Of a stretch of 64,000 nt of DNA, positions 6,111 through 55,950 are shown piece by piece. The stretch lies in IMG/VR virus record IMGVR_UViG_3300020202_000001, positions 124,001-188,000 of that record. The stretch is one strand, 5' to 3'. The notes under the pieces are model-generated. The model saw nothing but the letters and a program-made list of their open reading frames with translations, was not told the origin of the DNA and did not search any database. Both the position numbers and the translations under genes were made by a program. How positions within the stretch are numbered: the stretch's first letter is position 1; each line of letters opens with the position of its first letter.

Positions 6111-6150
6111 GAAAGAGGCCCCGGCGTCGGTGCCGGGGCCTCTCGCTTTC
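6111..6150. terminator. hairpin between convergent genes (probable bidirectional terminator)
   Basis: AGAGGCCCCGGC-GTCGGT-GCCGGGGCCTCT. Confidence 0.7.
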
Positions 6151-6167
6151 AAAAACCGGTTTTGAGA
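6148..6167 (+). repeat. dispersed 20-bp quasi-palindrome, copy 1 (TTCAAAAACCGGTTTTGAGA)
   Basis: Read directly; lies between convergent stop codons. Confidence 0.95.
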
Positions 6168-7340
6168 TCAGTAGCCCATCGCGATCGGTTCGAGGGCGGC
6201 CGCGCCGCGGAGCCCGTACCGGTCGCCGGCGGTCTTGTTGTGGATCGGCGGCACGCCGGCCTCGGTCAGCAGCTGCTCGAACAGGGCGGCGTCGTCGCGG
6301 GGCATCGTCTCGGCCAGCTCGGCCAGCTTCTCGACGTCGACCTCCAGCCCGGCCTGGACCTCCTTGGCGAAGTCGGCACCCATCAGGGCGGCGATGTCGT
6401 CGAGGGCGATCTTCTTGAACGCCTGGCGGTCGTACACCTTGCCGGTGCTCAGGGCACAGGCGGAGCCGATGCCCGCCGTGGCCTCCTTGTACGTGACCCG
6501 GAAGATCACGTCCTCGGGCCGCTGGATCGTGTCCGTGTACCGGCCGACGAGGTTCAGCGTGCGGTCGACGTCGTCCATCACCTCGGCCAGCTTCACGAGC
6601 TGGGCGGGCTGCAGCGCGAACCGGGGCGACTGCTGGATCGTGTTAGCGAGGGAGATGATCTGGTCCCGCTGGGCGGCGGCCTTCGTGAGGTGGGCTCGCT
6701 GGCGGATCATCGCCACGACCTCCTTCGGCTCGCAGACGCCCTGCCCGGCCTGCCGCTCGACGAACAGCTCCAGGTCGGTGCCGAGCCCGACGCCGAAGTG
6801 GGCCGCCTTCTCCAGGATCTTCCCGGCGATGACGTTCCGGTCGGCGTACGGCATCGTGTCCCGGTACTCCAGCAGCCACTCGGCGGCGGCCTTGGTCTCG
6901 GCGGCGGACTTCATGCGGCAGAACCGCTGCTTGGTTCCGTCCTCGCCGACCCAGACGTAGCCGAAGTCGGAGTCCGGCAGGCGGTCCTCCGCGTTCTTGT
7001 ACAGCTCGTCGTACCGGGCGTCGATCGCGTCGACCGCGGCCTTCAGGCCCCAGTAGTTCACCAGCCCGTCGAGCCGCTGCTTGACCTTGGCGGCGATCTT
7101 CGGGTGGTACTCCGCCGACTTCTCCTTGAAGTAAAGGGCGGAGAACCAGGTGGACGCGGCGTTGTGACACGGGTACAACTTGTTCACCGGGTCGGCGTAC
7201 GCGCTCGGCGCAACCCCTTCCGGGAAAAGGTCATCGGCCGAAGCCTGCTTGGCGAAGTCAGGGAAGGCGTAAAGCAGCGACAGGCGGTTGAGTTCCGCCC
7301 CGTTGGTGTCGCTGGCGAGATCAAGGATGGTCTCCGACAT
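6168..7340 (-). CDS. probable virion/head-associated protein with two A.P..K.YP-type repeats
   Basis: RBS AGGAG before ATG 7340; motifs AYADPVNKLYPCHNAASTWFSALYF and DSDFGYV..RFCRMKSAAETKAAAEWL; many K-x-A motifs; same strand as terminase. Confidence 0.55.
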   Translation of the reverse strand: MSETILDLASDTNGAELNRLSLLYAFPDFAKQASADDLFPEGVAPSAYADPVNKLYPCHNAASTWFSALYFKEKSAEYHPKIAAKVKQRLDGLVNYWGLKAAVDAIDARYDELYKNAEDRLPDSDFGYVWVGEDGTKQRFCRMKSAAETKAAAEWLLEYRDTMPYADRNVIAGKILEKAAHFGVGLGTDLELFVERQAGQGVCEPKEVVAMIRQRAHLTKAAAQRDQIISLANTIQQSPRFALQPAQLVKLAEVMDDVDRTLNLVGRYTDTIQRPEDVIFRVTYKEATAGIGSACALSTGKVYDRQAFKKIALDDIAALMGADFAKEVQAGLEVDVEKLAELAETMPRDDAALFEQLLTEAGVPPIHNKTAGDRYGLRGAAALEPIAMGY

Positions 7341-13449: not shown

Positions 13450-13863
13450 GTGTTCAACCTGATCGTAGCAGCCTTGGCCGTGTGGCAGGCAATCAACATC
13501 TGGCACCACTCCTCCCTCTTCAGCTCGAAGCGGGCGTACGTGGAGTGCTGGGACGACTGGCGGAAGGACTTGCTCCGCTGCCCGTTCTGTCTCAGCCCGT
13601 GGGTGGCCGTCGCTATGGTCCTGTGGCTGGGCCTCGTCGACCACCTGATCGTCCCCAGGCTGCCGGTGCTCGGGCTCGTGCTCGACGCCCCGATCCACGC
13701 CCTGGCCGTCTCCCGCGTTGCGAACGTGCTCCACGACCTGATGAAGAAGCTCGACCAGACGCCCAAAGCGAATAAGCTAGGCGTCCCGGTCACGGGCGAC
13801 CATCAGGCCGAAGAGCCGTCCGGGGCGGAGCAAGCAGACGCAGGGCCGCAACAGGCAGAGTGA
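13450..13863 (+). CDS. DUF1360-like membrane protein
   Basis: LLRCPFCLSPWVA motif between hydrophobic helices; GGAG RBS. Confidence 0.65.
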   Translation: MFNLIVAALAVWQAINIWHHSSLFSSKRAYVECWDDWRKDLLRCPFCLSPWVAVAMVLWLGLVDHLIVPRLPVLGLVLDAPIHALAVSRVANVLHDLMKKLDQTPKANKLGVPVTGDHQAEEPSGAEQADAGPQQAE

Positions 13864-13864
13864 A

Positions 13865-13884
13865 TCTCAAAACCGGTTTTTGAA
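13865..13884 (-). repeat. dispersed 20-bp quasi-palindrome, copy 2 (TCTCAAAACCGGTTTTTGAA, reverse orientation)
   Basis: Exact reverse complement of copy 1; abuts ATG 13885. Confidence 0.95.
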
Positions 13885-14748
13885 ATGAGCAGTGACGCAA
13901 CGAGAGGACCCCAACAGCCCCCGCAGGCACCGCCGGAGGAGCAGGCCCGAAACCTGCCCTTCTACCAGGCGGCGCTGAACGAGTTCAGGGCGACGGCCGC
14001 CAACGTGTTCGCATCTCACCCCGAGGTGCGTTCGGCGGTCGTCGTCCTGGACTACCGGGGAGGACTGAACGACGCGAAGATCGACAAGGCCATCTGGCTC
14101 GGAGATAACGGACCGGTGAACGAGCCGGCCGCGATGTTCGGCGGGATCTACAACATGCTCGGCGTGCTTGAGGTGATGTTCACCCGGGCGGCGCAGAACG
14201 AGCAGGCCATGGTGCAGCGGGCGCAGGCCCTCGGTGCCGAGATCGTGAAGAGGGAGCAGCGCCTTGCCGAAGTCAACAAAGCCGTCGCGGCTGCCGAGGC
14301 GTCCGCCCCCGGACCTATCGGACCCACGGGTCCGACCGGAGGACCCCGAGGAGAGCCAGAGCCCGAGCGGCCCTGGCCCGACCGCATCTGGTACAACGGC
14401 GGCCGCCGCGAAGTCACCGACTCCAAAGAAGCCCACGGGTTCGGCGACGTCTACGGCCAAGACGTCGGGGAGCACCAGCTCGCCAGCCTCGGGTACGTCC
14501 GGGAAGGGAGCCCCGGGGAAATCGACGGCTGGTGGTACCGCCAGCCCCGGCTCCCCGCCAAGCCCCAGCAGCAAGAGCGGGAAGCGGACGGCCGGTTCAC
14601 CGGGGACTTCGACCCCGGAGCCCCACCCGCAAGGCACCGGCGACTCCTCGACCACGAAGTCCGGCCGCCCGCCGGCGGGGTCGACGACCTCCTCGCCGAC
14701 GTCGGCGGGGGAGACGCTCCAGGCCCTGCTGGCAAGGCTGGGGATTGA
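13885..14748 (+). CDS. hypothetical protein; 3' half dual-coded with the RNase H N-terminus
   Basis: Typical codon usage, coiled-coil middle. Confidence 0.7.
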   Translation: MSSDATRGPQQPPQAPPEEQARNLPFYQAALNEFRATAANVFASHPEVRSAVVVLDYRGGLNDAKIDKAIWLGDNGPVNEPAAMFGGIYNMLGVLEVMFTRAAQNEQAMVQRAQALGAEIVKREQRLAEVNKAVAAAEASAPGPIGPTGPTGGPRGEPEPERPWPDRIWYNGGRREVTDSKEAHGFGDVYGQDVGEHQLASLGYVREGSPGEIDGWWYRQPRLPAKPQQQEREADGRFTGDFDPGAPPARHRRLLDHEVRPPAGGVDDLLADVGGGDAPGPAGKAGD

Positions 14749-20643: not shown

Positions 20644-20692
20644 TCCCCCGACCGGGGGTGTGATAGGATGTGTCCCTTTCCGGGCACCGACA

Positions 20693-20712
20693 TTCAAAAA
20701 CCGGTTTTGAGA
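20693..20712 (+). repeat. dispersed 20-bp quasi-palindrome, copy 3 (TTCAAAAACCGGTTTTGAGA)
   Basis: Identical to copy 1; abuts the AAGGAG RBS of the next gene. Confidence 0.95.
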
Positions 20713-20727
20713 AGGAGATCAAACAGC

Positions 20728-23003: not shown

Positions 23004-23360
23004 ATGGCCGACAAGCAGAAGCCCAAGGGCAAGGCGGGGCAGTGGGAGATCGAGCACAACATCGTGCTCAGCACCGGGCACATCACCCTCAAGGACCGCG
23101 ACCTGTTGCACGAGGACGCCGGGCCGTGGGAGTCGAGGCCGAAGCCCGGCCTGATCGTGTACGAGTACGAGGAGGGGTTCTTCCTCCACTGCTCGCCCGA
23201 CCAGGGGTTCTTCGAGGACGAGCTGCGGGTCGCCCAGCACCGCGGGTACAGCGCCGACCTCATCGCCCTGATGCGGCTGGCCAAGGCCCAGAACTGCAAG
23301 TTCGTCCACCTCGACGCGGACGGCCCGGTCCACCCCAACCTCCCCCAGCACGATTGGTAG
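23004..23360 (+). CDS. DUF5983-like protein
   Basis: LSTGHIT..D..LL, YEEGFF, A..QNC.FVHLDADGP..LP.HDW signature. Confidence 0.65.
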   Translation: MADKQKPKGKAGQWEIEHNIVLSTGHITLKDRDLLHEDAGPWESRPKPGLIVYEYEEGFFLHCSPDQGFFEDELRVAQHRGYSADLIALMRLAKAQNCKFVHLDADGPVHPNLPQHDW

Positions 23361-23380
23361 GCTCGAAGGGGACCGGGACA

Positions 23381-23522
23381 GGGCTCGGGGAGCGGAGCGT
23401 AGCGAAGCGACCCCGAGCCCGACTCGAAGAGAAGCCAGGCGGTTAAGAACAACACCGTGGAAATGAGCCGCCCTAGCGGCCGGCGAAGCCGGCCACGGGG
23501 GTTGTTTTGATCTCTTCGGGGT
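23381..23522. other. highly structured intergenic element (single-strand-origin-like DNA or ncRNA)
   Basis: 10-bp stem with an (AGCGN)4 loop, followed by a ~100-nt branched stem containing a GC-GAA-GC hairpin. Confidence 0.6.
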
Positions 23523-23532
23523 GACGTCTTGC

Positions 23533-23561
23533 TTGACTCCCCCGAATGGAGGAGGTATTTA
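23533..23561 (+). promoter_or_regulatory. sigma70-like promoter
   Basis: TTGACT-17 nt-TATTTA, followed by an AT-rich stretch. Confidence 0.55.
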
Positions 23562-23605
23562 TACCCTAAGGGTAGAATAACAAGACTTTTCCACTTTGGA
23601 GCCAA

Positions 23606-24553
23606 ATGGCCGCGTTCATCACCTATCCGTTCGAGCCCGAGGGCCTGTTCCAGGGTCACGGCTACTCGGCGGCGCGGCGGGCGGTCCTCTGGCCGGTCGT
23701 CCTGCCGGCGCTGAAGGCCGCCGCCCGGCAGGCGGGCACGAAGTTCGAGAAGCCGGGGCTGGCGGTCGCCCACCAGACCCTGCACGACGTGTGGCGGTCC
23801 CGCATCAAGAAGCTCGCCTCGGCCGGGTGGTCCCCGGTGCGGGCCGACGCCGACGCGGACCCCAAGGCGGACGGGACCCGGTCTGCCAACTACCGGTTCG
23901 TGTGCGTCGCCAACTGCCCGCCGTTCGCCGCCCGTACGCGGCGGGGGCAGAAGGGCCACGAGTGCCACCGGTCCCGCGTCTGCCCGATGTGCTACGCCCG
24001 CCGCGTCGTCATCGAGCTGTACAAGGCGACCGCGTACGCGTTCTTCCCCGACGACGAGGGCCGGCGGCACCAGCGGGTCGGGATCGCCGCCTGCCGGCGG
24101 ACGTTCGACGTGGGGCTGAGCGAGCGCGGGGCGGACGGGTGGCTGCTGGAGGCCAACCGCCTCCGGTTCGCCGACGCCGACCGCGTGCCCACCGCCCGCG
24201 GGTCCGCCGTGCTCACCACGTTCGAGCCGCTGCAGGGCCAGCCCGGCCGCATCCGCATCGTCCGGTCCACGCTGCTGCTCGTCCCGCAGGCGATCGACCT
24301 CGACCCGCTCCGGGTCAAAGGCGACGTCATGGCGGTCGAGCCGGCCGAGGTGACGAAGAAGTCGATCGGGCAGGTGGTGTCGTGGGCGGCGAAGTACCCG
24401 CTCGGCATGATGTACGGGGACGCCCCGATCGCCGTGGCCCTGTACGAGGCGGCGGCCGCCAAGCGGGCGAAGATGTTCACGACCGCCGGCCTGTTACGCA
24501 ACAACCAAGCCCGCACCCCCGCCCGTGCGGCGGACGCGAGCCAGCTCGATTGA
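23606..24553 (+). CDS. degenerate rolling-circle Rep (HUH, Rep_1-like) protein
   Basis: CHRSRVCPMCYARR zinc motif, GSAVLTTFEP, WAAKYP (motif III-like Tyr), LYEA..KRAKMFTTAGLLR; HUH histidines absent. Confidence 0.45.
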   Translation: MAAFITYPFEPEGLFQGHGYSAARRAVLWPVVLPALKAAARQAGTKFEKPGLAVAHQTLHDVWRSRIKKLASAGWSPVRADADADPKADGTRSANYRFVCVANCPPFAARTRRGQKGHECHRSRVCPMCYARRVVIELYKATAYAFFPDDEGRRHQRVGIAACRRTFDVGLSERGADGWLLEANRLRFADADRVPTARGSAVLTTFEPLQGQPGRIRIVRSTLLLVPQAIDLDPLRVKGDVMAVEPAEVTKKSIGQVVSWAAKYPLGMMYGDAPIAVALYEAAAAKRAKMFTTAGLLRNNQARTPARAADASQLD

Positions 24554-30920: not shown

Positions 30921-31401
30921 GCAACACGAGACCCCCTGCGCGGCCTGCCCGTTCTCCAAGACGTGCAAGCCGTACGCCGACGACCGGGCGGCGCTGGGCA
31001 ACAGCAGCCCGTTCGTCTACGTCGGCCAGGCCAACGGCAGCTTCACCCTGCCGTGCCACTCGACCCACGACTACACCCAGCTGGAGGAGCGGCTCGCGGC
31101 CGCCCAGCCGGGCAGCGGGTGCGAGTGCGCCGGCGCGGCGATCTTCCGGGCCAACATCGGCCTGCGGTACGCCGAGCGGCTGCTCCACCTGCCGGCCAAC
31201 CTCGGACCCGACTCGCCGGTGTTCGGCTCGTTCACCGAGTTCGTCGCCCACCACTACAAGATCCCGATCGACACGGCGAACATGATCGTCCACGATCTGC
31301 CGCCGGACCTGTTGACCGCGATCGAGGTGAGCAAGGTGCAGTTCAAGGCCCGGGTGCAGCCCGGGTCGGTCATCATCGCGGGTCAGCCGAAAGGCGGGTA
31401 G
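30892..31401 (+). CDS. Cys/His-rich protein (DUF6283-like)
   Basis: PCAACPF, LPCHS, ECAGA motifs. Confidence 0.6.
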   Translation: MSEANPPKRKQHETPCAACPFSKTCKPYADDRAALGNSSPFVYVGQANGSFTLPCHSTHDYTQLEERLAAAQPGSGCECAGAAIFRANIGLRYAERLLHLPANLGPDSPVFGSFTEFVAHHYKIPIDTANMIVHDLPPDLLTAIEVSKVQFKARVQPGSVIIAGQPKGG

Positions 31402-31409
31402 ACTGGAGA

Positions 31410-31429
31410 TGCAAAAACCAGTTTTGAGA
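31410..31429 (+). repeat. dispersed 20-bp quasi-palindrome, copy 5 (TGCAAAAACCAGTTTTGAGA)
   Basis: Two differences from copy 1. Confidence 0.9.
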
Positions 31430-31450
31430 TCTACCGGACAAGGAGGTCCA

Positions 31451-46510: not shown

Positions 46511-46673
46511 GGCCCGGCGACAGTGGATGCGGCACTTCCGCCGGGTCTACCTCGACCGGACGGGCCTGCACTACATCGGCCCGATCACCGAGCTGCAGAT
46601 GTTCCTCAACTGCAACTACCTGCCGGAGACGGCGGTCTACCAGCTGACCGGGGTCGGCGGGGCCTGGATCTAA
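46464..46673 (+). CDS. small hypothetical protein
   Basis: Typical codons in 3' part; TAA lies within repeat copy 8. Confidence 0.5.
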   Translation: MTTVTCHPLSNYAAREARRQWMRHFRRVYLDRTGLHYIGPITELQMFLNCNYLPETAVYQLTGVGGAWI

Positions 46674-46688
46674 AAACCGGTTTTGAGA
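46669..46688 (+). repeat. dispersed 20-bp site, copy 8 (TCTAAAAACCGGTTTTGAGA)
   Basis: 12 nt upstream of the polymerase ATG. Confidence 0.95.
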
Positions 46689-46700
46689 TCGGTGAGTCAC

Positions 46701-49700
46701 ATGCAGACAGTGAAGAAACGACGCAAGATCATCACCGACCTCGACGCCGACGCGAAGAAGGCGGAAGCGAGGGCGGCACACAAGGAGATCGGTGGCAGCG
46801 GGCTGTACCCGCTCGACGCCCCGGGCATGCCCCTGCCCGGCCCCGACTTCATGGAACACGCCCGCAACCTGGGCGACCTCTCGGACTTCAAGAAGGTGAA
46901 GGTCGAGGGGCAGGGCAAGAAGAAGACCGACACGGTGCTCGACTCGATCGGCGACAAGCTGGTCGAGCTGCACCGCAGGGCTCTCCGCGAGCCCGGGTTC
47001 ACGATGCCGATCCAGACGAAGCCGGGCATGCGCAAGAGCGTGCCGTTCGTGCCGGGTCACATCTGGGGCCAGTACATGAAGGAGTACGAGGCGGGCGACC
47101 GGATCGCGGTCGACGGCCCCCGCCCGGCCGACGTCATGGTCCTCGGCAAGATGCCGGGCAAGACGGAGGTGCAGGAAGGCCGGAACATGGTCGGCGAGTC
47201 CGGCAAGCTGCTGATCGACGTGATCCGCGAGCACCACATCAAGGGCTCGCCGAACTGGTACGTGACGAACGTGCTGAAGTTCCAGCCGCCGGACAGCAGC
47301 GGCACGATCAAGGCCCCGTGGCTCAAGGACTGCATGCCGCTGCTCCACCAGGAGCTGCGGATCGTGCGGCCGAAGTACATCCTCTGCCTCGGGGCCGACG
47401 CGTCCAAGGCCCTGCTCGGGCCGAAGTACGGCGTCGACTACATGGACGGCCGGGTGATGGAGCTGGAGTACCCGGTCCACATGGAGGCGACGGACGACCC
47501 GGACAAGGTGCTGATGCACAAGGCCCTGGTCATGACGGTCGTCCACCCGGCGGCCGTCGTCCGCGCCCCCGAGCAGCGCCGCCGGCTGGAGCGGGGCATG
47601 GCCCGCTTCGCGATGCTCCAGAACGGCATCCGGTTCGACAAGGAAGAGGTCGACATCGACCACCGGACGATCCGCACGCTGGAGCAGCTCCAGGCCCTGC
47701 TGCACGAGATCGACCACGACCCCTACAAGAAGGACGACTGGATCTCGTTCGACGCGGAGTGGAACGGCGAGCACCCGCAGAACAAGGGCAGCTACGTCCG
47801 CACGATGCAGCTGGCGTGGCGGCCGAAGCACGCGGCCGCGATCATCTGGTCCGACACGACCGGCAAGTTCGTCTTCTGCGACGAGGACGGCAAGCCGGCC
47901 AAGAAGCGGGCGATCAAGCTGCTGAACGAGTGGTTCGCGACCAAGCGGATCACGATGCACTTCGGGGTGGCCGACCTGGAGTGGATGCAGTTCATCGGCC
48001 TGACCGAGCTGGCGAAGCGGTACCGGGTCCCGCTGTACGACAAGTTCTTCGGCGAGTTCGAGAAGCCACAGCGGAAGAAGCTGCGGAAGATGGGCTTCGC
48101 CCCCGGCGACCTCGTGCCGGCCTGGGTCCGCACCCACTTCGAGGGCGGGCACGACACCGGCCTCGCCGGCCACGCGATCGAGGAGACCGCCCAGCTCGGC
48201 CTCGAAGTGCTGGCGATGCGGTACACGACGTGCCCCCGGTACGACATCCCGCTCCACAACTGGAAGGAGGCGTTCTGCAAGGAGAAGGGGTACAAGGCCA
48301 AGGACCTCGAAGGGTACGGCCCCTGCCCCGACGAGATCATCGTGCCGTACGGCTGCTACGACGCGGACGCGACCCTGCGGCTGATGTACGAGCAGCTCCC
48401 GCTGATCGACAACGACTACGAGGGCAACTGCTGCCGGGAGAGCTTCTGGGAGTCGATGCTCACCGTGGGGCCGATCCTGGAGATGCACTGCACGGGCATC
48501 CCGGTCGACCGCAAGCGGATCGACTTCCTGACGGCCGCGTTCATGAAGGCCCGGGCCGAGCAGGAGGAGAAGATCCGCAAGTGGGCGAGGTGGCCGGAGT
48601 TCAACATCCGGTCCGTCACCCAGGTGCGGGAGTTCCTGTTCGGCGAGAAGTACAACGGCAAGAAGACCCCGACCGGCGACATCGTCAGCGTCCGCCCCCG
48701 CAAGGGCGTGGACGGGGCGAAGCACACCGCCAAGAGCCTCTACCTCGAACCGATCCTCGACACGTCCAAGCCGCCCAAGGCGTGGTTCGACATCAAGGAC
48801 AAGGGGCTCGAACACGAGCACACGCCCGGGACCGGCAAGACGATCCTCGGCGTGCTCGCGCAGGAGAACCAGGAGCAGAGCGAGTACGTCCAGTGGATTC
48901 GCGACTACCGGTTCCTCGACCAGGTCCTCAAGAGCGTGCTCCGGCCGCCCGTGGTGGACAAGGACGGAGAGGTCGTGCGGGACGAGACGGCCGAGGCGGC
49001 CAGCAGCATCGACGCCTCGACCGGGCAGGAGGCCAGCCCGTACAGCTTCGGGCGGGACAACCTCGGCGGCGTGGTCTACGACGCCGGGCTCGCGGCCGTG
49101 ATCTGCGGCGACGGCCGGGTGCGGACGCACCTGTACCCGACCACCGAGACCAAGCGGTGGCGGTCGGCCCGGCCGAACCTGCAGAACATGTCGAAGCGGC
49201 GGGACCCCGACTACACCCGCCTGCTGGGCGGCACGAAGAACGAGAAGGGCAAGTGGGTCGGCGGCGACTACAAGTACAAGCTGCGGTCGCTGCTGCACGC
49301 CATCCCCGGGCACGTCCTGGTCGAGGCGGACTTCATCGGCGCGGAGCTGTACCTGATGGCGGTCATGTCGGGCGACCCGACGATGATCGAGCACGCCACG
49401 CGGAACCAGCTGCCCGAGGACGACCCGCTCTACTACGACATCCACTCCAACGTCGCCGTGCTCGCCTTCAACCTGAAGTGCGAGCCGACGAAGAAGGGGC
49501 TGGAGTCGATCGGGAAGGTGTCCCTCCGCATCGCGGCGAAGAACGTGATCTTCGGCGTCGCCTACGGGCGGCAGGCGAAGGCGATCGCGCTGCAGTGCAA
49601 GGAGGAGGGCAACCCGATCACGGTGCAGCAGGCGCAGATCATCATCGACATCGTGTTCCAGCTGTACCCGGGGCTCAAGCCGTTCTTCACCGAGGCCCAG

Positions 49701-50174
49701 CAGCGGTCGAAGGACCCCCGCTGGATCTGCTCGTGCTTCGGGGCGTTCCGCCGGTTCCCGCAGACCGACGACTTCTCGCTGCAGGGCGAGTTCGAGCGGC
49801 AGGCGATGAACTTCGGGATTCAGTCGGGCATCGCCTCGGCCATGGACCGGGCGCTGGCCTACATGGAGGACTATCGCAACAACACGATCGGGGACCCGGA
49901 CTTCTTCAAGTTCGCCCTCCAGATCCACGACGCCGTCCTGCTGCACGTCCCCTACGCCAACGTCGAGCGGGTCGTCGAGGACGTGCTGCCGTACAACCTG
50001 ACCAAGCGGGTCGAGATCTACCCGACCACGCTCGACGGGGTGCCCACCGGCGAGGGTCCGTACCACCTGGGCATCGACACCGAGATCTTCGACCACTGGG
50101 GCGAGCCGCTCACGCCGAACTTCTGCGAGGAGCACGGCATCCCCCTCAAGTACGCCAAAGGAAAGGCAGCGTGA
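46701..50174 (+). CDS. polA: family A DNA polymerase with N-terminal uracil-DNA glycosylase-like domain and 3'-5' exonuclease
   Basis: UDG4-like VMVLGKMPG..E..GRNMVGESGKLL, YVTNVLKF, ILCLGA.A, VHPAAVVR; exonuclease SFDAE and YGCYDAD; motif A EADFIGAEL, motif B RIAAKNVIFGVAYG, motif C QIHDAV. Confidence 0.93.
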   Translation: MQTVKKRRKIITDLDADAKKAEARAAHKEIGGSGLYPLDAPGMPLPGPDFMEHARNLGDLSDFKKVKVEGQGKKKTDTVLDSIGDKLVELHRRALREPGFTMPIQTKPGMRKSVPFVPGHIWGQYMKEYEAGDRIAVDGPRPADVMVLGKMPGKTEVQEGRNMVGESGKLLIDVIREHHIKGSPNWYVTNVLKFQPPDSSGTIKAPWLKDCMPLLHQELRIVRPKYILCLGADASKALLGPKYGVDYMDGRVMELEYPVHMEATDDPDKVLMHKALVMTVVHPAAVVRAPEQRRRLERGMARFAMLQNGIRFDKEEVDIDHRTIRTLEQLQALLHEIDHDPYKKDDWISFDAEWNGEHPQNKGSYVRTMQLAWRPKHAAAIIWSDTTGKFVFCDEDGKPAKKRAIKLLNEWFATKRITMHFGVADLEWMQFIGLTELAKRYRVPLYDKFFGEFEKPQRKKLRKMGFAPGDLVPAWVRTHFEGGHDTGLAGHAIEETAQLGLEVLAMRYTTCPRYDIPLHNWKEAFCKEKGYKAKDLEGYGPCPDEIIVPYGCYDADATLRLMYEQLPLIDNDYEGNCCRESFWESMLTVGPILEMHCTGIPVDRKRIDFLTAAFMKARAEQEEKIRKWARWPEFNIRSVTQVREFLFGEKYNGKKTPTGDIVSVRPRKGVDGAKHTAKSLYLEPILDTSKPPKAWFDIKDKGLEHEHTPGTGKTILGVLAQENQEQSEYVQWIRDYRFLDQVLKSVLRPPVVDKDGEVVRDETAEAASSIDASTGQEASPYSFGRDNLGGVVYDAGLAAVICGDGRVRTHLYPTTETKRWRSARPNLQNMSKRRDPDYTRLLGGTKNEKGKWVGGDYKYKLRSLLHAIPGHVLVEADFIGAELYLMAVMSGDPTMIEHATRNQLPEDDPLYYDIHSNVAVLAFNLKCEPTKKGLESIGKVSLRIAAKNVIFGVAYGRQAKAIALQCKEEGNPITVQQAQIIIDIVFQLYPGLKPFFTEAQQRSKDPRWICSCFGAFRRFPQTDDFSLQGEFERQAMNFGIQSGIASAMDRALAYMEDYRNNTIGDPDFFKFALQIHDAVLLHVPYANVERVVEDVLPYNLTKRVEIYPTTLDGVPTGEGPYHLGIDTEIFDHWGEPLTPNFCEEHGIPLKYAKGKAA

Positions 50175-55247: not shown

Positions 55248-55895
55248 ATGAGCGACGACGCACCACGCAAGAACTGGTTCAGCGAGCGGATGAAGGGGCA
55301 GAACGCCCAAGGCCGCCTGGACCACGAGCTGTTGCAGTTCGAGGCCGAGCGGCTGAAGTGGCTGCTCCAGCGATTCGGGCTGAAGAAACGGATGCACCAG
55401 GTGATCCGCCGCTACCACGCGGACACCGGCCGTTCGGAGCTTCGGTTCGAGGCGTTCAACGAAGTGTTCCCCACCTTCCCCTTCCTGATCGGGTGCACGA
55501 AGCTCCAGGGCGTACCGATGCCCGGCCGCGTGTCCAAGAGCGGGCAGCAGAAGGTGACGCCGGTCGACTACCACATCTACCTCGACCCGGCCTCGACCGA
55601 GCCGGCGCGGTTCAAGAACTTCACGAAGGTCCCGTTCGTCGGGGCCTACAAGGACTTCTACGCCGCGTCGGCCGGTCGGGCCAACGGTCGGAAGGTGGCA
55701 CTGATCTTCCCGCGCAAGGGGTTCCTGCACGGGATGGTCATGCACAACGACTCCTCCGAGCAGTTCTGGACGGAGGGACTGTCGTGGGTGTACAAGGTGC
55801 CCGGGACGGAGAACCGCCTGTACGTCCAGCCCCTGTCGGCCCTCGTGGAGGCGATCTACGAGGGAGGCAGGGGGTGGCGTCCGCCCGGGGAGTAG
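55248..55895 (+). CDS. hypothetical protein
   Basis: Typical codons. Confidence 0.7.
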   Translation: MSDDAPRKNWFSERMKGQNAQGRLDHELLQFEAERLKWLLQRFGLKKRMHQVIRRYHADTGRSELRFEAFNEVFPTFPFLIGCTKLQGVPMPGRVSKSGQQKVTPVDYHIYLDPASTEPARFKNFTKVPFVGAYKDFYAASAGRANGRKVALIFPRKGFLHGMVMHNDSSEQFWTEGLSWVYKVPGTENRLYVQPLSALVEAIYEGGRGWRPPGE

Positions 55896-55896
55896 A

Positions 55897-55916
55897 TCTC
55901 AAAACCGGTTTTTAGA
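55897..55916 (-). repeat. dispersed 20-bp site, copy 9 (TCTCAAAACCGGTTTTTAGA)
   Basis: Exact reverse complement of copy 8; 5 nt upstream of a -35 box. Confidence 0.95.
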
Positions 55917-55921
55917 TCCCC

Positions 55922-55950
55922 TAGACATTCCCCCTGACGGGGGATAGACT
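55922..55950 (+). promoter_or_regulatory. sigma70-like promoter
   Basis: TAGACA-17 nt-TAGACT. Confidence 0.6.

What the first reader, a model, noticed from the sequence alone, without database searches (positions are those of the whole stretch)
23381..23522. Single-strand-origin-like structured element with an (AGCGN)4 loop
Seen: a perfect stem GGGCTCGGGG/CCCCGAGCCC encloses AGCGG AGCGT AGCGA AGCGA. It is followed by a branched fold (CTCGAAGAGA/TCTCTTCGGG, AGAACAAC/GTTGTTTT, CCGTGG/CCACGG, inner GCCGC-CCTA-GCGGC and CCGGC-GAA-GCCGG), then a promoter and an AT-rich tract. Established: TAGCG(T/A) in a hairpin loop is the CS-6 motif of rolling-circle plasmid ssoA origins (TAGCGA is at 23400-23405), and GC-GAA-GC is an unusually stable ssDNA mini-hairpin. 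Inference: a priming signal or replication origin of the phage, or a structured ncRNA.
Basis: partly seen in the sequence, partly recalled or inferred. Interest (0 to 1): 0.6.

Follow-up and report, generated by a model that had tools for sequence, protein, structure and literature searches.

The report
Origin-like DNA hairpin beside Rep-like gene
A conserved, strongly folded 160-base non-coding element in a 224-kb soil phage lies just upstream of a distant relative of rolling-circle replication initiators. Its loop is built from DNA-specific GC-GNA-GC mini-hairpins, and the same hairpin type recurs next to primase or initiator genes in unrelated phages, so it is most likely a single-strand DNA replication or priming signal and not an RNA gene.

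Summary
All stems are at the stated places. The + strand folds far better than shuffles (RNA z -4.6, DNA z -4.0).

The only close relative found (flanking protein 54% identical) keeps the fold through compensatory changes.

The ssoA/CS-6 reading fails. TAGCGA is not conserved (CAGCGG in the relative) and the RSB box is absent.

1. The gene 85 nt downstream is a Rep_1 (pC194/pUB110)-like initiator fold. It has an invariant Tyr and a Cys4 motif but no HUH histidines.
2. (AGCGN)4 is three overlapping GCGNAGC units. This is the DNA mini-hairpin that tolerates any N and is much weaker as RNA.
3. A 33%-identical Rep-like gene in another element has two such hairpins upstream.
4. Hairpins with the same loop but unrelated stems occur in at least 9 other viral contig families (28-73% GC). 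Two sit beside primase-type genes.
5. These hairpins lie in either orientation relative to neighbouring genes.

No Rfam hit and no RNA data. GC skew shows no inflection here, and function is untested.

Verdict: a new variant of ssDNA initiation signals. Confidence is about 0.45. The main rival is a structured terminator or 3' RNA.

The parts
23004..23360 (+). Upstream gene, 118 aa, DUF5983 C-terminal domain. Its stop codon TAG is at 23358-23360.
   Evidence: GC3 gene call; PF19419 at E 5e-20
23362..23369 (+). CTCGAAGG. This is an upstream direct copy of the 5' arm of the outer stem, kept in L002. It could pair instead with 23511-23520 and so enclose hairpin 1.
   Evidence: Sequence; conserved in L002. 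The alternative pairing is inference.
23381..23420 (+). Hairpin 1: perfect 10-bp stem (23381-23390 with 23411-23420) and the 20-nt loop (AGCGN)4 at 23391-23410.
   Evidence: In L002 the basal pair changes G-C to T-A and the loop keeps AGCG x4 with other N.
23392..23408 (+). Three overlapping GC-GNA-GC mini-hairpin units: GCGGAGC at 23392-23398, GCGTAGC at 23397-23403, GCGAAGC at 23402-23408.
   Evidence: Script count of GCGNAGC; properties of d(GCGNAGC) from PMC13037366
23423..23520 (+). Branched second domain. The outer stem (23423-23432 with 23511-23520) is followed inward by 23446-23453 with 23501-23508, then 23455-23460 with 23493-23498. These close a junction that carries two small hairpins.
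   Evidence: MFE and centroid folds; same fold in L002; two double compensatory changes in the outer stem
23467..23480 (+). Inner hairpin A: GCCGC-CCTA-GCGGC. L002 has one extra C-G pair and the loop CCAA.
23480..23492 (+). Inner hairpin B: CCGGC-GAA-GCCGG, which contains GCGAAGC at 23483-23489. In L002 the loop is GCA, still a GNA loop.
23533..23561 (+). Promoter-like site TTGACT-17 nt-TATTTA with a C-rich/G-rich spacer. It probably drives the Rep-like gene.
   Evidence: Conserved in L002; same design at about 10 other sites of the genome; not called by the generic scan
23606..24553 (+). 315-aa gene: distant Rep_1 (PF01446)-like replication-initiator fold. C104, C120, C126, C129 and Y264 are invariant; there is no conserved histidine (no HUH).
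   Evidence: AlphaFold2 pLDDT 93; ESM Atlas TM 0.54-0.59 over about 230 aa to Rep_1 clusters; 2 of 50 relatives hit PF01446 at E 0.0015; SIRV1 ORF119 Rep Z 6.8; invariant columns

Best explanation
The element is a cis-acting replication signal that works as folded single-stranded DNA of the + strand. It is an origin or priming site of the sso/ssi kind, functionally paired with the Rep_1-like initiator encoded 85 nt downstream.

Proposed mechanism:
1. The region becomes single-stranded, by unwinding, by displacement after a Rep-dependent nick, or as lagging-strand template.
2. Hairpin 1 and the three-way domain then snap into a very stable structure that SSB does not coat well. Its exposed cap is an array of d(GC-GNA-GC) mini-hairpins.
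3. This landmark is recognised either by the Rep-like protein or by a priming enzyme. That enzyme would be host RNA polymerase or primase, since no phage primase is recognisable. DNA synthesis starts there.

Shown: the fold, its conservation with compensatory changes, the GCGNAGC make-up, the Rep_1-like neighbour, recurrence of the same hairpin type beside Rep-like and primase-type genes, and its independence of the direction of transcription.

Inferred: that the active form is ssDNA, that the Rep-like protein or a primase binds it, and that priming or initiation occurs here.
For: 1. Stable + strand fold: RNA z -4.57, DNA z -4.02. G.T wobbles make the - strand worse.
2. L002, whose flanking protein is 54% identical, keeps the element at 84-88% identity. 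Three other intergenic regions of the same genome pair are 66-74% identical.
3. Of the 42 consensus pairs, 3 changed on both sides and kept the pair, 1 changed on one side, and none is broken.
4. In the loop only the N of AGCGN varies. The inner triloop changes GAA to GCA. This is exactly what GC-GNA-GC allows. d(GCGNAGC) melts at 70-76 C for any N, while r(GCGAAAGC) melts at 39 C. Such mini-hairpins mark the G4/St-1/alpha3 primase origins and RSF1010 ssiA (PMC13037366).
5. This genome's ordinary terminator-like hairpins have 10-13 bp stems and 7-8 nt loops, with no GNA caps. 4 of the 11 intergenic + strand GCGNAGC sites of the whole genome lie in this element.
6. The downstream gene is Rep_1-like. 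It lies in the nucleotide-metabolism and replication block: dCTP deaminase, NUDIX, helicase, PolA.
7. L015 carries a Rep-like gene only 33% identical in a different element. It has two hairpins with (AGCGN)3-6 loops 170 and 280 nt upstream of that gene.
8. In IMG/VR, (AGCGN)4 sites are flanked by perfect stems of 8 bp or more in 13 of 128 cases, against 31 of 4640 random positions. The stems are unrelated in sequence and the genomes range from 28 to 73% GC.
9. Neighbours include a Prim-Pol+AAA_25 primase-helicase (L092) and a PHROG 'DNA primase' relative (L046).
10. The AGCGN strand is sense to flanking genes in 4 contig families and antisense in 6. That is hard to reconcile with a role inside mRNAs.
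11. No DnaG-type or Prim-Pol primase is detectable in the phage.
Against: - No experiment and no read-level data bear on it. Only DNA runs kept as contigs hold the sequence.
- Cumulative GC skew has its minimum near 60 kb and its maximum near 190 kb of the genome, with no inflection at 147.4 kb. This is not visibly the main bidirectional origin.
- The Rep-like family lacks the HUH histidines, so nicking activity is doubtful.
- The window's own protein gets no PF01446 hit.
- Only 3 of 9 readable Rep-like loci have the pentamer hairpin. L009, L010, L013, L014, L132 and L133 do not.
- Some hairpins of the class lie in structural-gene modules and look like mobile REP/MITE-type inserts: L072, L082, L104.
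- Covariation within the element rests on only two sequences.
- A + strand RNA would fold just as well by the energy model. The element sits where a terminator of the upstream operon would be expected.
Confidence: 0.45

Rival explanations
1. It is a structured RNA at the 3' end of the upstream operon. That could be a compound intrinsic terminator or 3'-end protecting structure, or a small 3'-UTR-derived RNA. Read-through transcripts of the DUF5983 gene would fold into hairpin 1 and the branched domain. The A-rich and U-rich arms (AGAACAAC and GUUGUUUU) around a GC core would act as a terminator just before the next promoter.
For: - The element lies directly after a stop codon and directly before a conserved promoter-like site, on the sense strand.
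- RNA fold z is -4.57.
- G-U pairs are tolerated on the + strand only.
- Another intergenic hairpin (window 16264 region) is also conserved between the two phages, so terminator-like hairpins do persist at this divergence.
- L046 and L104 carry their hairpins just after a gene end in sense orientation.
Against: - No Rfam family matches at the gathering or the permissive threshold.
- The generic terminator scan finds only a weak internal site.
- This phage's usual terminator-like hairpins look different.
- A terminator does not need four exactly kept AGCG units or GNA triloops, and these are only weakly stabilising in RNA (PMC13037366).
- In 6 of 10 contig families the AGCGN strand is antisense to the flanking genes.
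- No RNA data are available.
Confidence: 0.25
2. It is a double-stranded regulatory region. The four AGCG pentamers would be iteron-like binding sites for the Rep-like protein or another DNA-binding protein. That protein would autoregulate the downstream promoter, and the inverted repeats would be operator symmetry, not extruded structure.
For: - Replication initiators commonly bind short tandem repeats next to their own promoter.
- L013, a 38%-identical Rep-like locus, has four GGTGACTATC repeats directly upstream of its start codon.
- The pentamers are conserved next to Rep-like genes in the window, L002 and L015.
Against: - The stems around the repeats covary, or differ completely between loci, while staying perfectly complementary. 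That points to pairing within a strand.
- Wobble pairs favour one strand.
- The branched second domain has no repeat structure.
- The same loop occurs beside unrelated proteins (primase-polymerase, ATPase, excisionase), so one cognate dsDNA-binding protein is unlikely.
Confidence: 0.12
3. It is a mobile or selfish palindromic element (REP/MITE-like hairpin) that landed in this gap and has no role for the phage.
For: L072, L082 and L104 carry a closely similar unit (GTCAT-GC-rich arm, (AGCGN)4 loop, complementary arm). It sits between a capsid-like gene and a connector-like gene, in opposite orientations in L082 and L104, and even supplies stop or start codons.
Against: - The element is single-copy in this 224-kb genome.
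- It holds a syntenic position in L002, with compensatory evolution and the highest non-coding identity of the region.
- Two further copies lie upstream of a distant Rep-like gene.
- It is linked to replication genes in other families.
Confidence: 0.08
4. It is a hairpin promoter of the phage N4 type. A DNA hairpin with a 5-7 bp stem and a 3-nt purine loop (GC-GGA-GC or GC-GAA-GC) would extrude from supercoiled DNA and be read by an RNA polymerase that recognises single-stranded promoters.
For: - N4 virion RNA polymerase binds GCGGAGC and GAA-capped hairpins (PMC13037366).
- Inner hairpin B is 5 bp plus GAA.
- The 3'-most unit of the big loop is GCGGAGC in 13 of 16 hairpins of the class.
Against: - No T7/N4-like RNA polymerase domain was found (although that control rang nowhere), and no ORF exceeds 1501 aa.
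- L002 has a pyrimidine at the loop centre (GCA).
- The genome has its own recurrent sigma-70-like promoter design.
Confidence: 0.05

Closest known systems
ssoA-type single-strand origins of rolling-circle plasmids (pT181, pLS1/pMV158, pE194)
   Same: - About 150 nt of strand-specific, extensively folded non-coding DNA lying near a Rep gene (PMC5703833).
- An AGCG-containing terminal loop.
- Proposed role in starting synthesis on displaced single-stranded DNA.
   Different: - RSB is absent.
- CS-6 is not conserved.
- The replicon is a 224-kb terminally redundant dsDNA phage, not a small plasmid.
- The loop is a 4-unit pentamer array.
- RNA-polymerase priming is untested.
Primase-dependent ssDNA initiation signals: G4/St-1/alpha3 complementary-strand origins and RSF1010 ssiA/ssiB
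   Same: Hairpins that contain GCGNNAGC, GCGNAGC or CCGAAGG mini-hairpins, resist SSB, and mark where a primase starts (PMC13037366).
   Different: - Those signals carry a single mini-hairpin, not a tandem overlapping array inside a 10-bp-stem loop.
- Their cognate primases (DnaG, RepB') have no detectable homologue in this phage.
- There is no sequence homology.
Rep_1 (PF01446) initiators of pC194/pUB110 with their double-strand origin upstream of rep
   Same: - The gene-plus-upstream-origin layout.
- The Cys-x5-Cys-Pro-x-Cys...Arg motif aligns with pC194 RepA.
- The overall fold matches Rep_1 clusters.
- An invariant Tyr.
   Different: - No HUH histidines.
- No Pfam hit for the window's protein.
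- No CTTGATA-type nick sequence is conserved.
- The family lives in jumbo-phage-like and integrated elements.
Phage N4 early hairpin promoters
   Same: GC-G(G/A)A-GC capped DNA hairpins that function in single-stranded, extruded form (PMC13037366).
   Different: - No N4-like polymerase is detected.
- The loop array and the branched domain have no N4 counterpart.
REP/MITE-type palindromic repeats
   Same: GC-rich hairpins found in either orientation between genes. The L072/L082/L104 units behave this way.
   Different: The window's element is single-copy, syntenic and linked to a Rep-like gene.

Membership tests
ssoA single-strand origin | CS-6 hexamer TAGCG(T/A) conserved in the terminal loop (PMC4598088) | tested here: not met
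   TAGCGA is present at 23400-23405, but the homologous position in L002 reads CAGCGG and the L002 loop has no T at all. It is one register of (AGCGN)4.
ssoA single-strand origin | RSB box TTATGCCGAGAAAATTT in the stem (PMC4598088, PMC5703833) | tested here: not met
   0 matches in the window with up to 3 mismatches
ssoA single-strand origin | Large strand-specific ssDNA secondary structure of about 150 nt | tested here: met
   DNA fold of the + strand is -41.2 kcal/mol, z -4.02. The - strand is weaker.
ssoA single-strand origin | Orientation-dependent, RNA-polymerase-primed conversion of ssDNA to dsDNA | not testable with these tools
   Needs a plasmid or M13 assay or in vitro priming.
Mini-hairpin-containing ssDNA initiation signals (G4 oric, ssiA) | Presence of GCGNAGC or GCGNNAGC mini-hairpin sequence in a hairpin of the non-coding origin | tested here: met
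   Four GCGNAGC units at 23392, 23397, 23402 and 23483. All N variants in L002 stay GNA. Definition from PMC13037366.
Mini-hairpin-containing ssDNA initiation signals (G4 oric, ssiA) | Primer synthesis by a primase at the site | not testable with these tools
   No assay is possible. No DnaG Zn-ribbon, DnaB_C or Prim-Pol domain in the phage.
Rep_1 (PF01446) rolling-circle initiators (for the adjacent gene) | Pfam model score above the curated cut-off | tested here: not met
   No hit for the window protein. 2 of 50 family members hit at E 0.0015.
Rep_1 (PF01446) rolling-circle initiators (for the adjacent gene) | Overall fold | tested here: met
   TM 0.54-0.59 over 229-243 residues to Rep_1 clusters, with two independent models. 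Feature score 0.94. Best PDB match is the SIRV1 ORF119 Rep, Z 6.8, which is below the level the tool calls safe.
Rep_1 (PF01446) rolling-circle initiators (for the adjacent gene) | HUH metal-binding histidines | tested here: not met
   No invariant or near-invariant His in the 50-sequence alignment. The strand 199-208 reads GSAVLTTFEP.
Rep_1 (PF01446) rolling-circle initiators (for the adjacent gene) | Catalytic tyrosine, and the N-terminal Cys motif before Arg-Arg | tested here: inconclusive
   Y264, C104, C120, C126 and C129 are invariant. The Cys motif aligns with pC194 RepA at E 0.0066, hhalign probability only 6%. The equivalence of Y264 to the Rep_1 active-site Tyr rests on my recollection of the AKYP motif.
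Intrinsic (rho-independent) terminator | GC-rich hairpin with a short loop followed directly by a U run | tested here: inconclusive
   The scan finds one weak site at 23490-23504 (0.8 expected by chance). The U-rich 23501-23508 is itself paired in the fold.
Any described RNA family (Rfam 15), tRNA/tmRNA | Covariance-model or ARAGORN match | tested here: not met
   Nothing at gathering score in the window or in 13 related loci. Best permissive hits have E 4-10.
Phage N4 hairpin promoter | 5-7 bp stem, 3-nt loop with a central purine, plus a cognate single-subunit virion RNA polymerase | tested here: not met
   The window's inner hairpin fits (5 bp, GAA), but L002 has GCA. PF00940 was not found, although the control genomes did not ring either. 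The largest ORF is 1501 aa.

The most novel reading that the evidence does not exclude
Hairpins capped by a tandem array of overlapping GC-GNA-GC DNA mini-hairpins, i.e. an (AGCGN)3-6 loop, are a widespread and so far undescribed class of phage and mobile-element replication signals. They are used with different initiator types (HUH-less Rep_1-like proteins, primase-polymerases, other primases) in genomes from 28 to 73% GC. The window's element is a composite origin of this class, serving a Rep_1-derived initiator that has lost the HUH nuclease centre.
Probability: 0.3. Interest if true: 0.75.

Novelty: new variant of a known kind. Interest (0 to 1): 0.62.

Why it matters
Origins and priming sites of large environmental phages are almost never identifiable from sequence.

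If this reading is right, a short and easily searched signature would flag replication start or priming sites across very different phages and integrated elements. The signature is a perfect stem around three or more AGCGN pentamers.

It would also give the biophysically famous GCGNAGC mini-hairpin a general biological role beyond G4, RSF1010 and N4.

It would further define a Rep_1-derived protein family that keeps the tyrosine and the zinc motif but not the HUH centre. That raises the question of how, or whether, such proteins nick DNA.

The element and protein are small enough for direct binding, nicking and priming assays.

Tried and rejected
- **Known RNA families.** Rfam at gathering and permissive thresholds, and ARAGORN: nothing.
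- **Annotated collections.** BLAST of the region and of the Rep-like protein against annotated phages and plasmids: no match.
- **Search for relatives.**
  - Protein-pattern scans of IMG/VR, JGI metagenomes and GTDB genomes found only the same genome. Two tries failed for lack of conserved columns.
  - The word-index protein search gave one relative (P0002/L002) and nothing for the DUF5983 protein.
  - Exact scan for the stem-plus-loop in GTDB genomes: 0. A stricter IMG/VR scan gave 2 unrelated coding hits.
- **Covariance model R1.** Built from the two sequences, it finds no second copy in the genome and only chance-level hits (E 0.17 or worse) in distant Rep-like loci. The L015 hairpins were seen by eye and by pattern, not by the model.
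- **Expression.** No RNA run holds the sequence. Only two soil DNA runs kept as contigs do, and they are probably the source samples. I therefore did not use read laying, because contigs cannot show ends or strands.
- **GC skew.** No inflection at the element.
- **PF01446 against the phage's own genome.** No hit.
- **hhalign of the family against pC194 RepA.** Only the Cys motif aligns.
- **Ideas considered and dropped.**
  - A cluster of Bacillus-type Chi sites (AGCGG, from memory). The fifth base varies, a hairpin is not needed for Chi, and the genome is 69% GC.
  - A TRAP-like NAG-N2 protein-binding RNA. Only four units, and the orientation is not tied to transcription.
  - tRNA-like RNA, riboswitch, retron or bridge RNA. 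No matching gene or model.
- **Formal pair counting on the 16-hairpin alignment.** Not possible, because the stems are out of register. The stems are listed instead.
- **Look-ups that returned no DNA.** P0004's long contig, P0013 and P0010.
- **crAssphage.** The record was not in the phage collection under two accessions.
- **Complex prediction.** Not used, because no protein-protein claim is made.

Full report
**Setting.** The window is bases 124001-188000 of a 224,418-bp virus record with direct terminal repeats and 69% G+C, from a soil metagenome. Of 248 genes called by third-position G+C, 227 lie on the + strand. The finding lies in a 245-bp gap (23361-23605). The gap is bounded upstream by a DUF5983 gene (23004-23360) and downstream by a 315-aa gene (23606-24553). 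Nearby genes are a dCTP-deaminase-like gene, a NUDIX gene, a helicase, a RecA/KaiC-like ATPase and a family-A DNA polymerase fused to a UDG-like domain. This is therefore the DNA-metabolism part of the genome.

**Observation.**
- The + strand folds into a 10-bp hairpin with a 20-nt loop, followed by a branched domain.
- As RNA the fold is -78.4 kcal/mol, z -4.57. As DNA it is -41.2 kcal/mol, z -4.02.
- The complementary strand is weaker because several pairs are G.T wobbles.
- The pentamer pattern is expected 0.08 times per 64 kb.
- The element is single-copy in the genome.

**Conservation.** No annotated phage or plasmid resembles the region. One relative was found, a 13-kb Logan contig (L002) with the same gene order. 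Its downstream protein is 54% identical.
- The element is 84-88% identical there. Three other intergenic regions of the same pair are 66-74% identical.
- Of the 42 consensus pairs, three changed on both sides and stayed paired, one changed on one side, and none is broken. RNAalifold drops pairs that do not hold in both sequences, so 'none broken' is partly by construction.
- By hand, the outer stem changes GAAGAGA/TCTCTTC to GAAAGG/TCTTTC.
- Inner hairpin A gains a C-G pair.
- The base pair closing hairpin 1 changes G-C to T-A.
- In the big loop the four AGCG cores are kept while the fifth bases change from G,T,A,A to G,C,G,A. The small triloop changes GAA to GCA.

**The ssoA reading.** TAGCGA is therefore not conserved. 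The RSB box that accompanies CS-6 in ssoA (PMC4598088, PMC5703833) is absent. The element is not an ssoA.

**What the repeat is.** (AGCGN)4 is three overlapping copies of GCGNAGC (23392, 23397, 23402). A fourth copy caps inner hairpin B (23483).
- d(GCGNAGC) is the 'extraordinarily stable mini-hairpin DNA'. Any N is allowed, with Tm 70-76 C.
- The RNA versions are much weaker (r(GCGAAAGC) Tm 39 C).
- The motif is known at the primase start sites of phages G4, St-1 and alpha3, in RSF1010 ssiA, and in phage N4 hairpin promoters (PMC13037366).
- The pattern of variation seen here, free N and fixed GC-G.A-GC, is exactly what this DNA structure requires.
- The phage's ordinary terminator-like hairpins have 10-13 bp stems and 7-8 nt loops, and do not use the motif. 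4 of the 11 intergenic + strand GCGNAGC sites of the whole genome are in this one element.

**The neighbour.**
- The 315-aa protein has no Pfam, PHROG or NCBIfam hit.
- An exhaustive profile search found 162 representatives.
- Two of 50 aligned members touch PF01446 (Rep_1) at E 0.0015.
- An AlphaFold2 model (pLDDT 93) matches ESM Atlas clusters that are 91-97% Rep_1, at TM 0.54-0.59 over about 230 residues. The Atlas's own model and its feature search agree.
- The best solved structure is the SIRV1 ORF119 Rep (Z 6.8), followed by nanovirus and circovirus Rep nuclease domains. These scores are too low to stand alone.
- Invariant residues are four cysteines, two prolines and Y264. The Cys-x5-Cys-Pro-x-Cys motif aligns with that of pC194 RepA.
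- No histidine is conserved, so the HUH centre is missing.
- I therefore call it Rep_1-like and not a member of Rep_1.
- Homologues lie in syntenic phage-like contigs (L009, L010, L013) and in what look like integrated elements (L015, L132, the P0004 contig).

**Recurrence.** L015 carries a Rep-like gene only 33% identical, next to an integrase-like gene. It has two hairpins 170 and 280 nt upstream of that gene. Their loops are (AGCGN)3 and six NGCGN-type pentamers, and their stems are unrelated to the window's. Six other readable Rep-like loci lack such loops. L013 instead has four GGTGACTATC repeats.

- None carries the Rep-like gene.
- In 14 sites of 11 contigs the pentamers sit in the loop of a perfect 7-12 bp hairpin. 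Every contig family has a different stem, and the genomes range from 28 to 73% G+C.
- Stems of 8 bp or more flank 13 of 128 sites, against 31 of 4640 random positions in the same loci.
- Some contigs are related (L092/L105/L110 and L072/L082), so about nine independent families remain.
- L092's two hairpins lie in a non-coding stretch upstream of a Prim-Pol+AAA_25 primase-helicase. L046's hairpin follows a gene related to PHROG 35358 'DNA primase'. L031 lies next to an AAA ATPase, and L094 next to an excisionase-type HTH protein.
- L072, L082 and L104 lie between capsid-like and connector-like genes and look like mobile palindromes.
- The AGCGN strand is the sense strand of the neighbouring genes in four families and the antisense strand in six.

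**Interpretation.** Several points together favour a single-strand DNA replication or priming signal over an RNA element:
- the DNA-specific nature of the motif;
- strand-specific folding;
- association with three different kinds of replication-initiation genes;
- indifference to the direction of transcription.

The absence of any recognisable primase in the phage fits two possibilities: Rep-dependent initiation, or priming by a host enzyme at a structured site.

Against this reading:
- nothing has been tested functionally;
- GC skew shows no inflection here;
- the Rep-like protein lacks HUH;
- only a third of Rep-like loci have the hairpin;
- the element's position, after a stop codon and before a conserved promoter-like site, is where a terminator would be.

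I put the ssDNA-signal reading at about 0.45, a structured terminator or 3' RNA at 0.25, a duplex operator at 0.12, a selfish palindrome at 0.08 and an N4-type promoter at 0.05.

**Novelty.** ssDNA initiation signals containing a mini-hairpin are known. I did not find the following described:
- a tandem overlapping array of them as the loop of a long hairpin;
- their recurrence across very different phages;
- their pairing with an HUH-less Rep_1-like family.

A full-text search for the literal repeat returned only primer tables, one of which shows the motif in the crAssphage genome. I rate the finding a new variant of a known kind.

Noticed in passing
window 6141-6176, 13855-13896, 20689-20726, 31398-31442, 46668-46697, 55888-55930; about 25 sites genome-wide: An AT-rich palindrome, TC(A/T/C)AAAACCGGTTTT(T)GA, recurs just upstream of gene starts throughout this 69% G+C genome. 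It is also present in L002. It looks like the operator or promoter element of a phage-wide regulator.
   Followed up: partly
window 20645, 28321, 50906, 55930, 63467; genome 1071, 5223, 11808, 96281, 122804: Promoter-like sites of the form TTGAC.-(C5 N4 G5 hairpin)-TA...T, that is, a small GC hairpin in the spacer between the -35 and -10 hexamers. The site before the Rep-like gene (23533-23561) is a variant of this design.
   Followed up: partly
window 23362-23369 and 23423-23430: CTCGAAG(G/A) occurs on both sides of hairpin 1 and is kept in L002. Either copy could pair with 23511-23520, which gives two mutually exclusive closings of the fold.
   Followed up: no
L013:2910-3000: Four copies of GGTGACTATC, iteron-like, lie directly upstream of a 38%-identical Rep-like gene. 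A GGCGGC-GCA-GCCGCC hairpin lies 215 nt upstream.
   Followed up: no
L072:467-503, L082:1342-1378, L104:518-554: A REP/MITE-like unit (ATAACCT-GTCAT..., (AGCGN)4 loop, two alternative 3' partners) sits between capsid-like and connector-like genes. Its orientation is opposite in L082 and L104, and it supplies a stop codon in one and sits against the start codon in the other.
   Followed up: partly
L094:9480-9720 (- strand) and L109:3250-3560: Tandem arrays of short hairpins in non-coding stretches. In L094, CCCCCC-TTGA-GGGGGG alternates with AGCGN-loop hairpins. In L109, T6CG-GCGGAG-CGA6 is repeated about 5 times.
   Followed up: no
crAssphage genome near 28,192 (PMC4111155, Table 2, primer 7): The published primer GTAGCGAAGCGGAGCGTTCTA shows that the same pentamer run exists in the 29% G+C crAssphage genome. 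I could not fetch the record to see the context.
   Followed up: no
window 46701-50174: A 1157-aa protein combines a uracil-DNA-glycosylase-superfamily domain (residues 139-294) with a family-A DNA polymerase (796-1094).
   Followed up: no
whole genome G000: No DnaG zinc-ribbon, DnaB_C, Prim-Pol or T7-like RNA polymerase domain was detected by six-frame Pfam searches. The primase of this 224-kb phage, if it has one, is unrecognised.
   Followed up: partly
L132:2138-2434 and the P0004 contig (ENA ERZ1758171): Rep-like homologues in apparently chromosomal contexts lie next to DUF1580 genes and ordinary bacterial genes. This suggests integrated elements and may hint at the host group.
   Followed up: no
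L008:1-20: The 2.4-kb contig carrying the 45%-identical Rep-like gene begins with TTGTTCTTTCGGCGGGG, which resembles the 3' end of the window's element (GTTGTTTTGATCTCTTCGGGG). The contig is cut inside what may be a third copy of the element.
   Followed up: no
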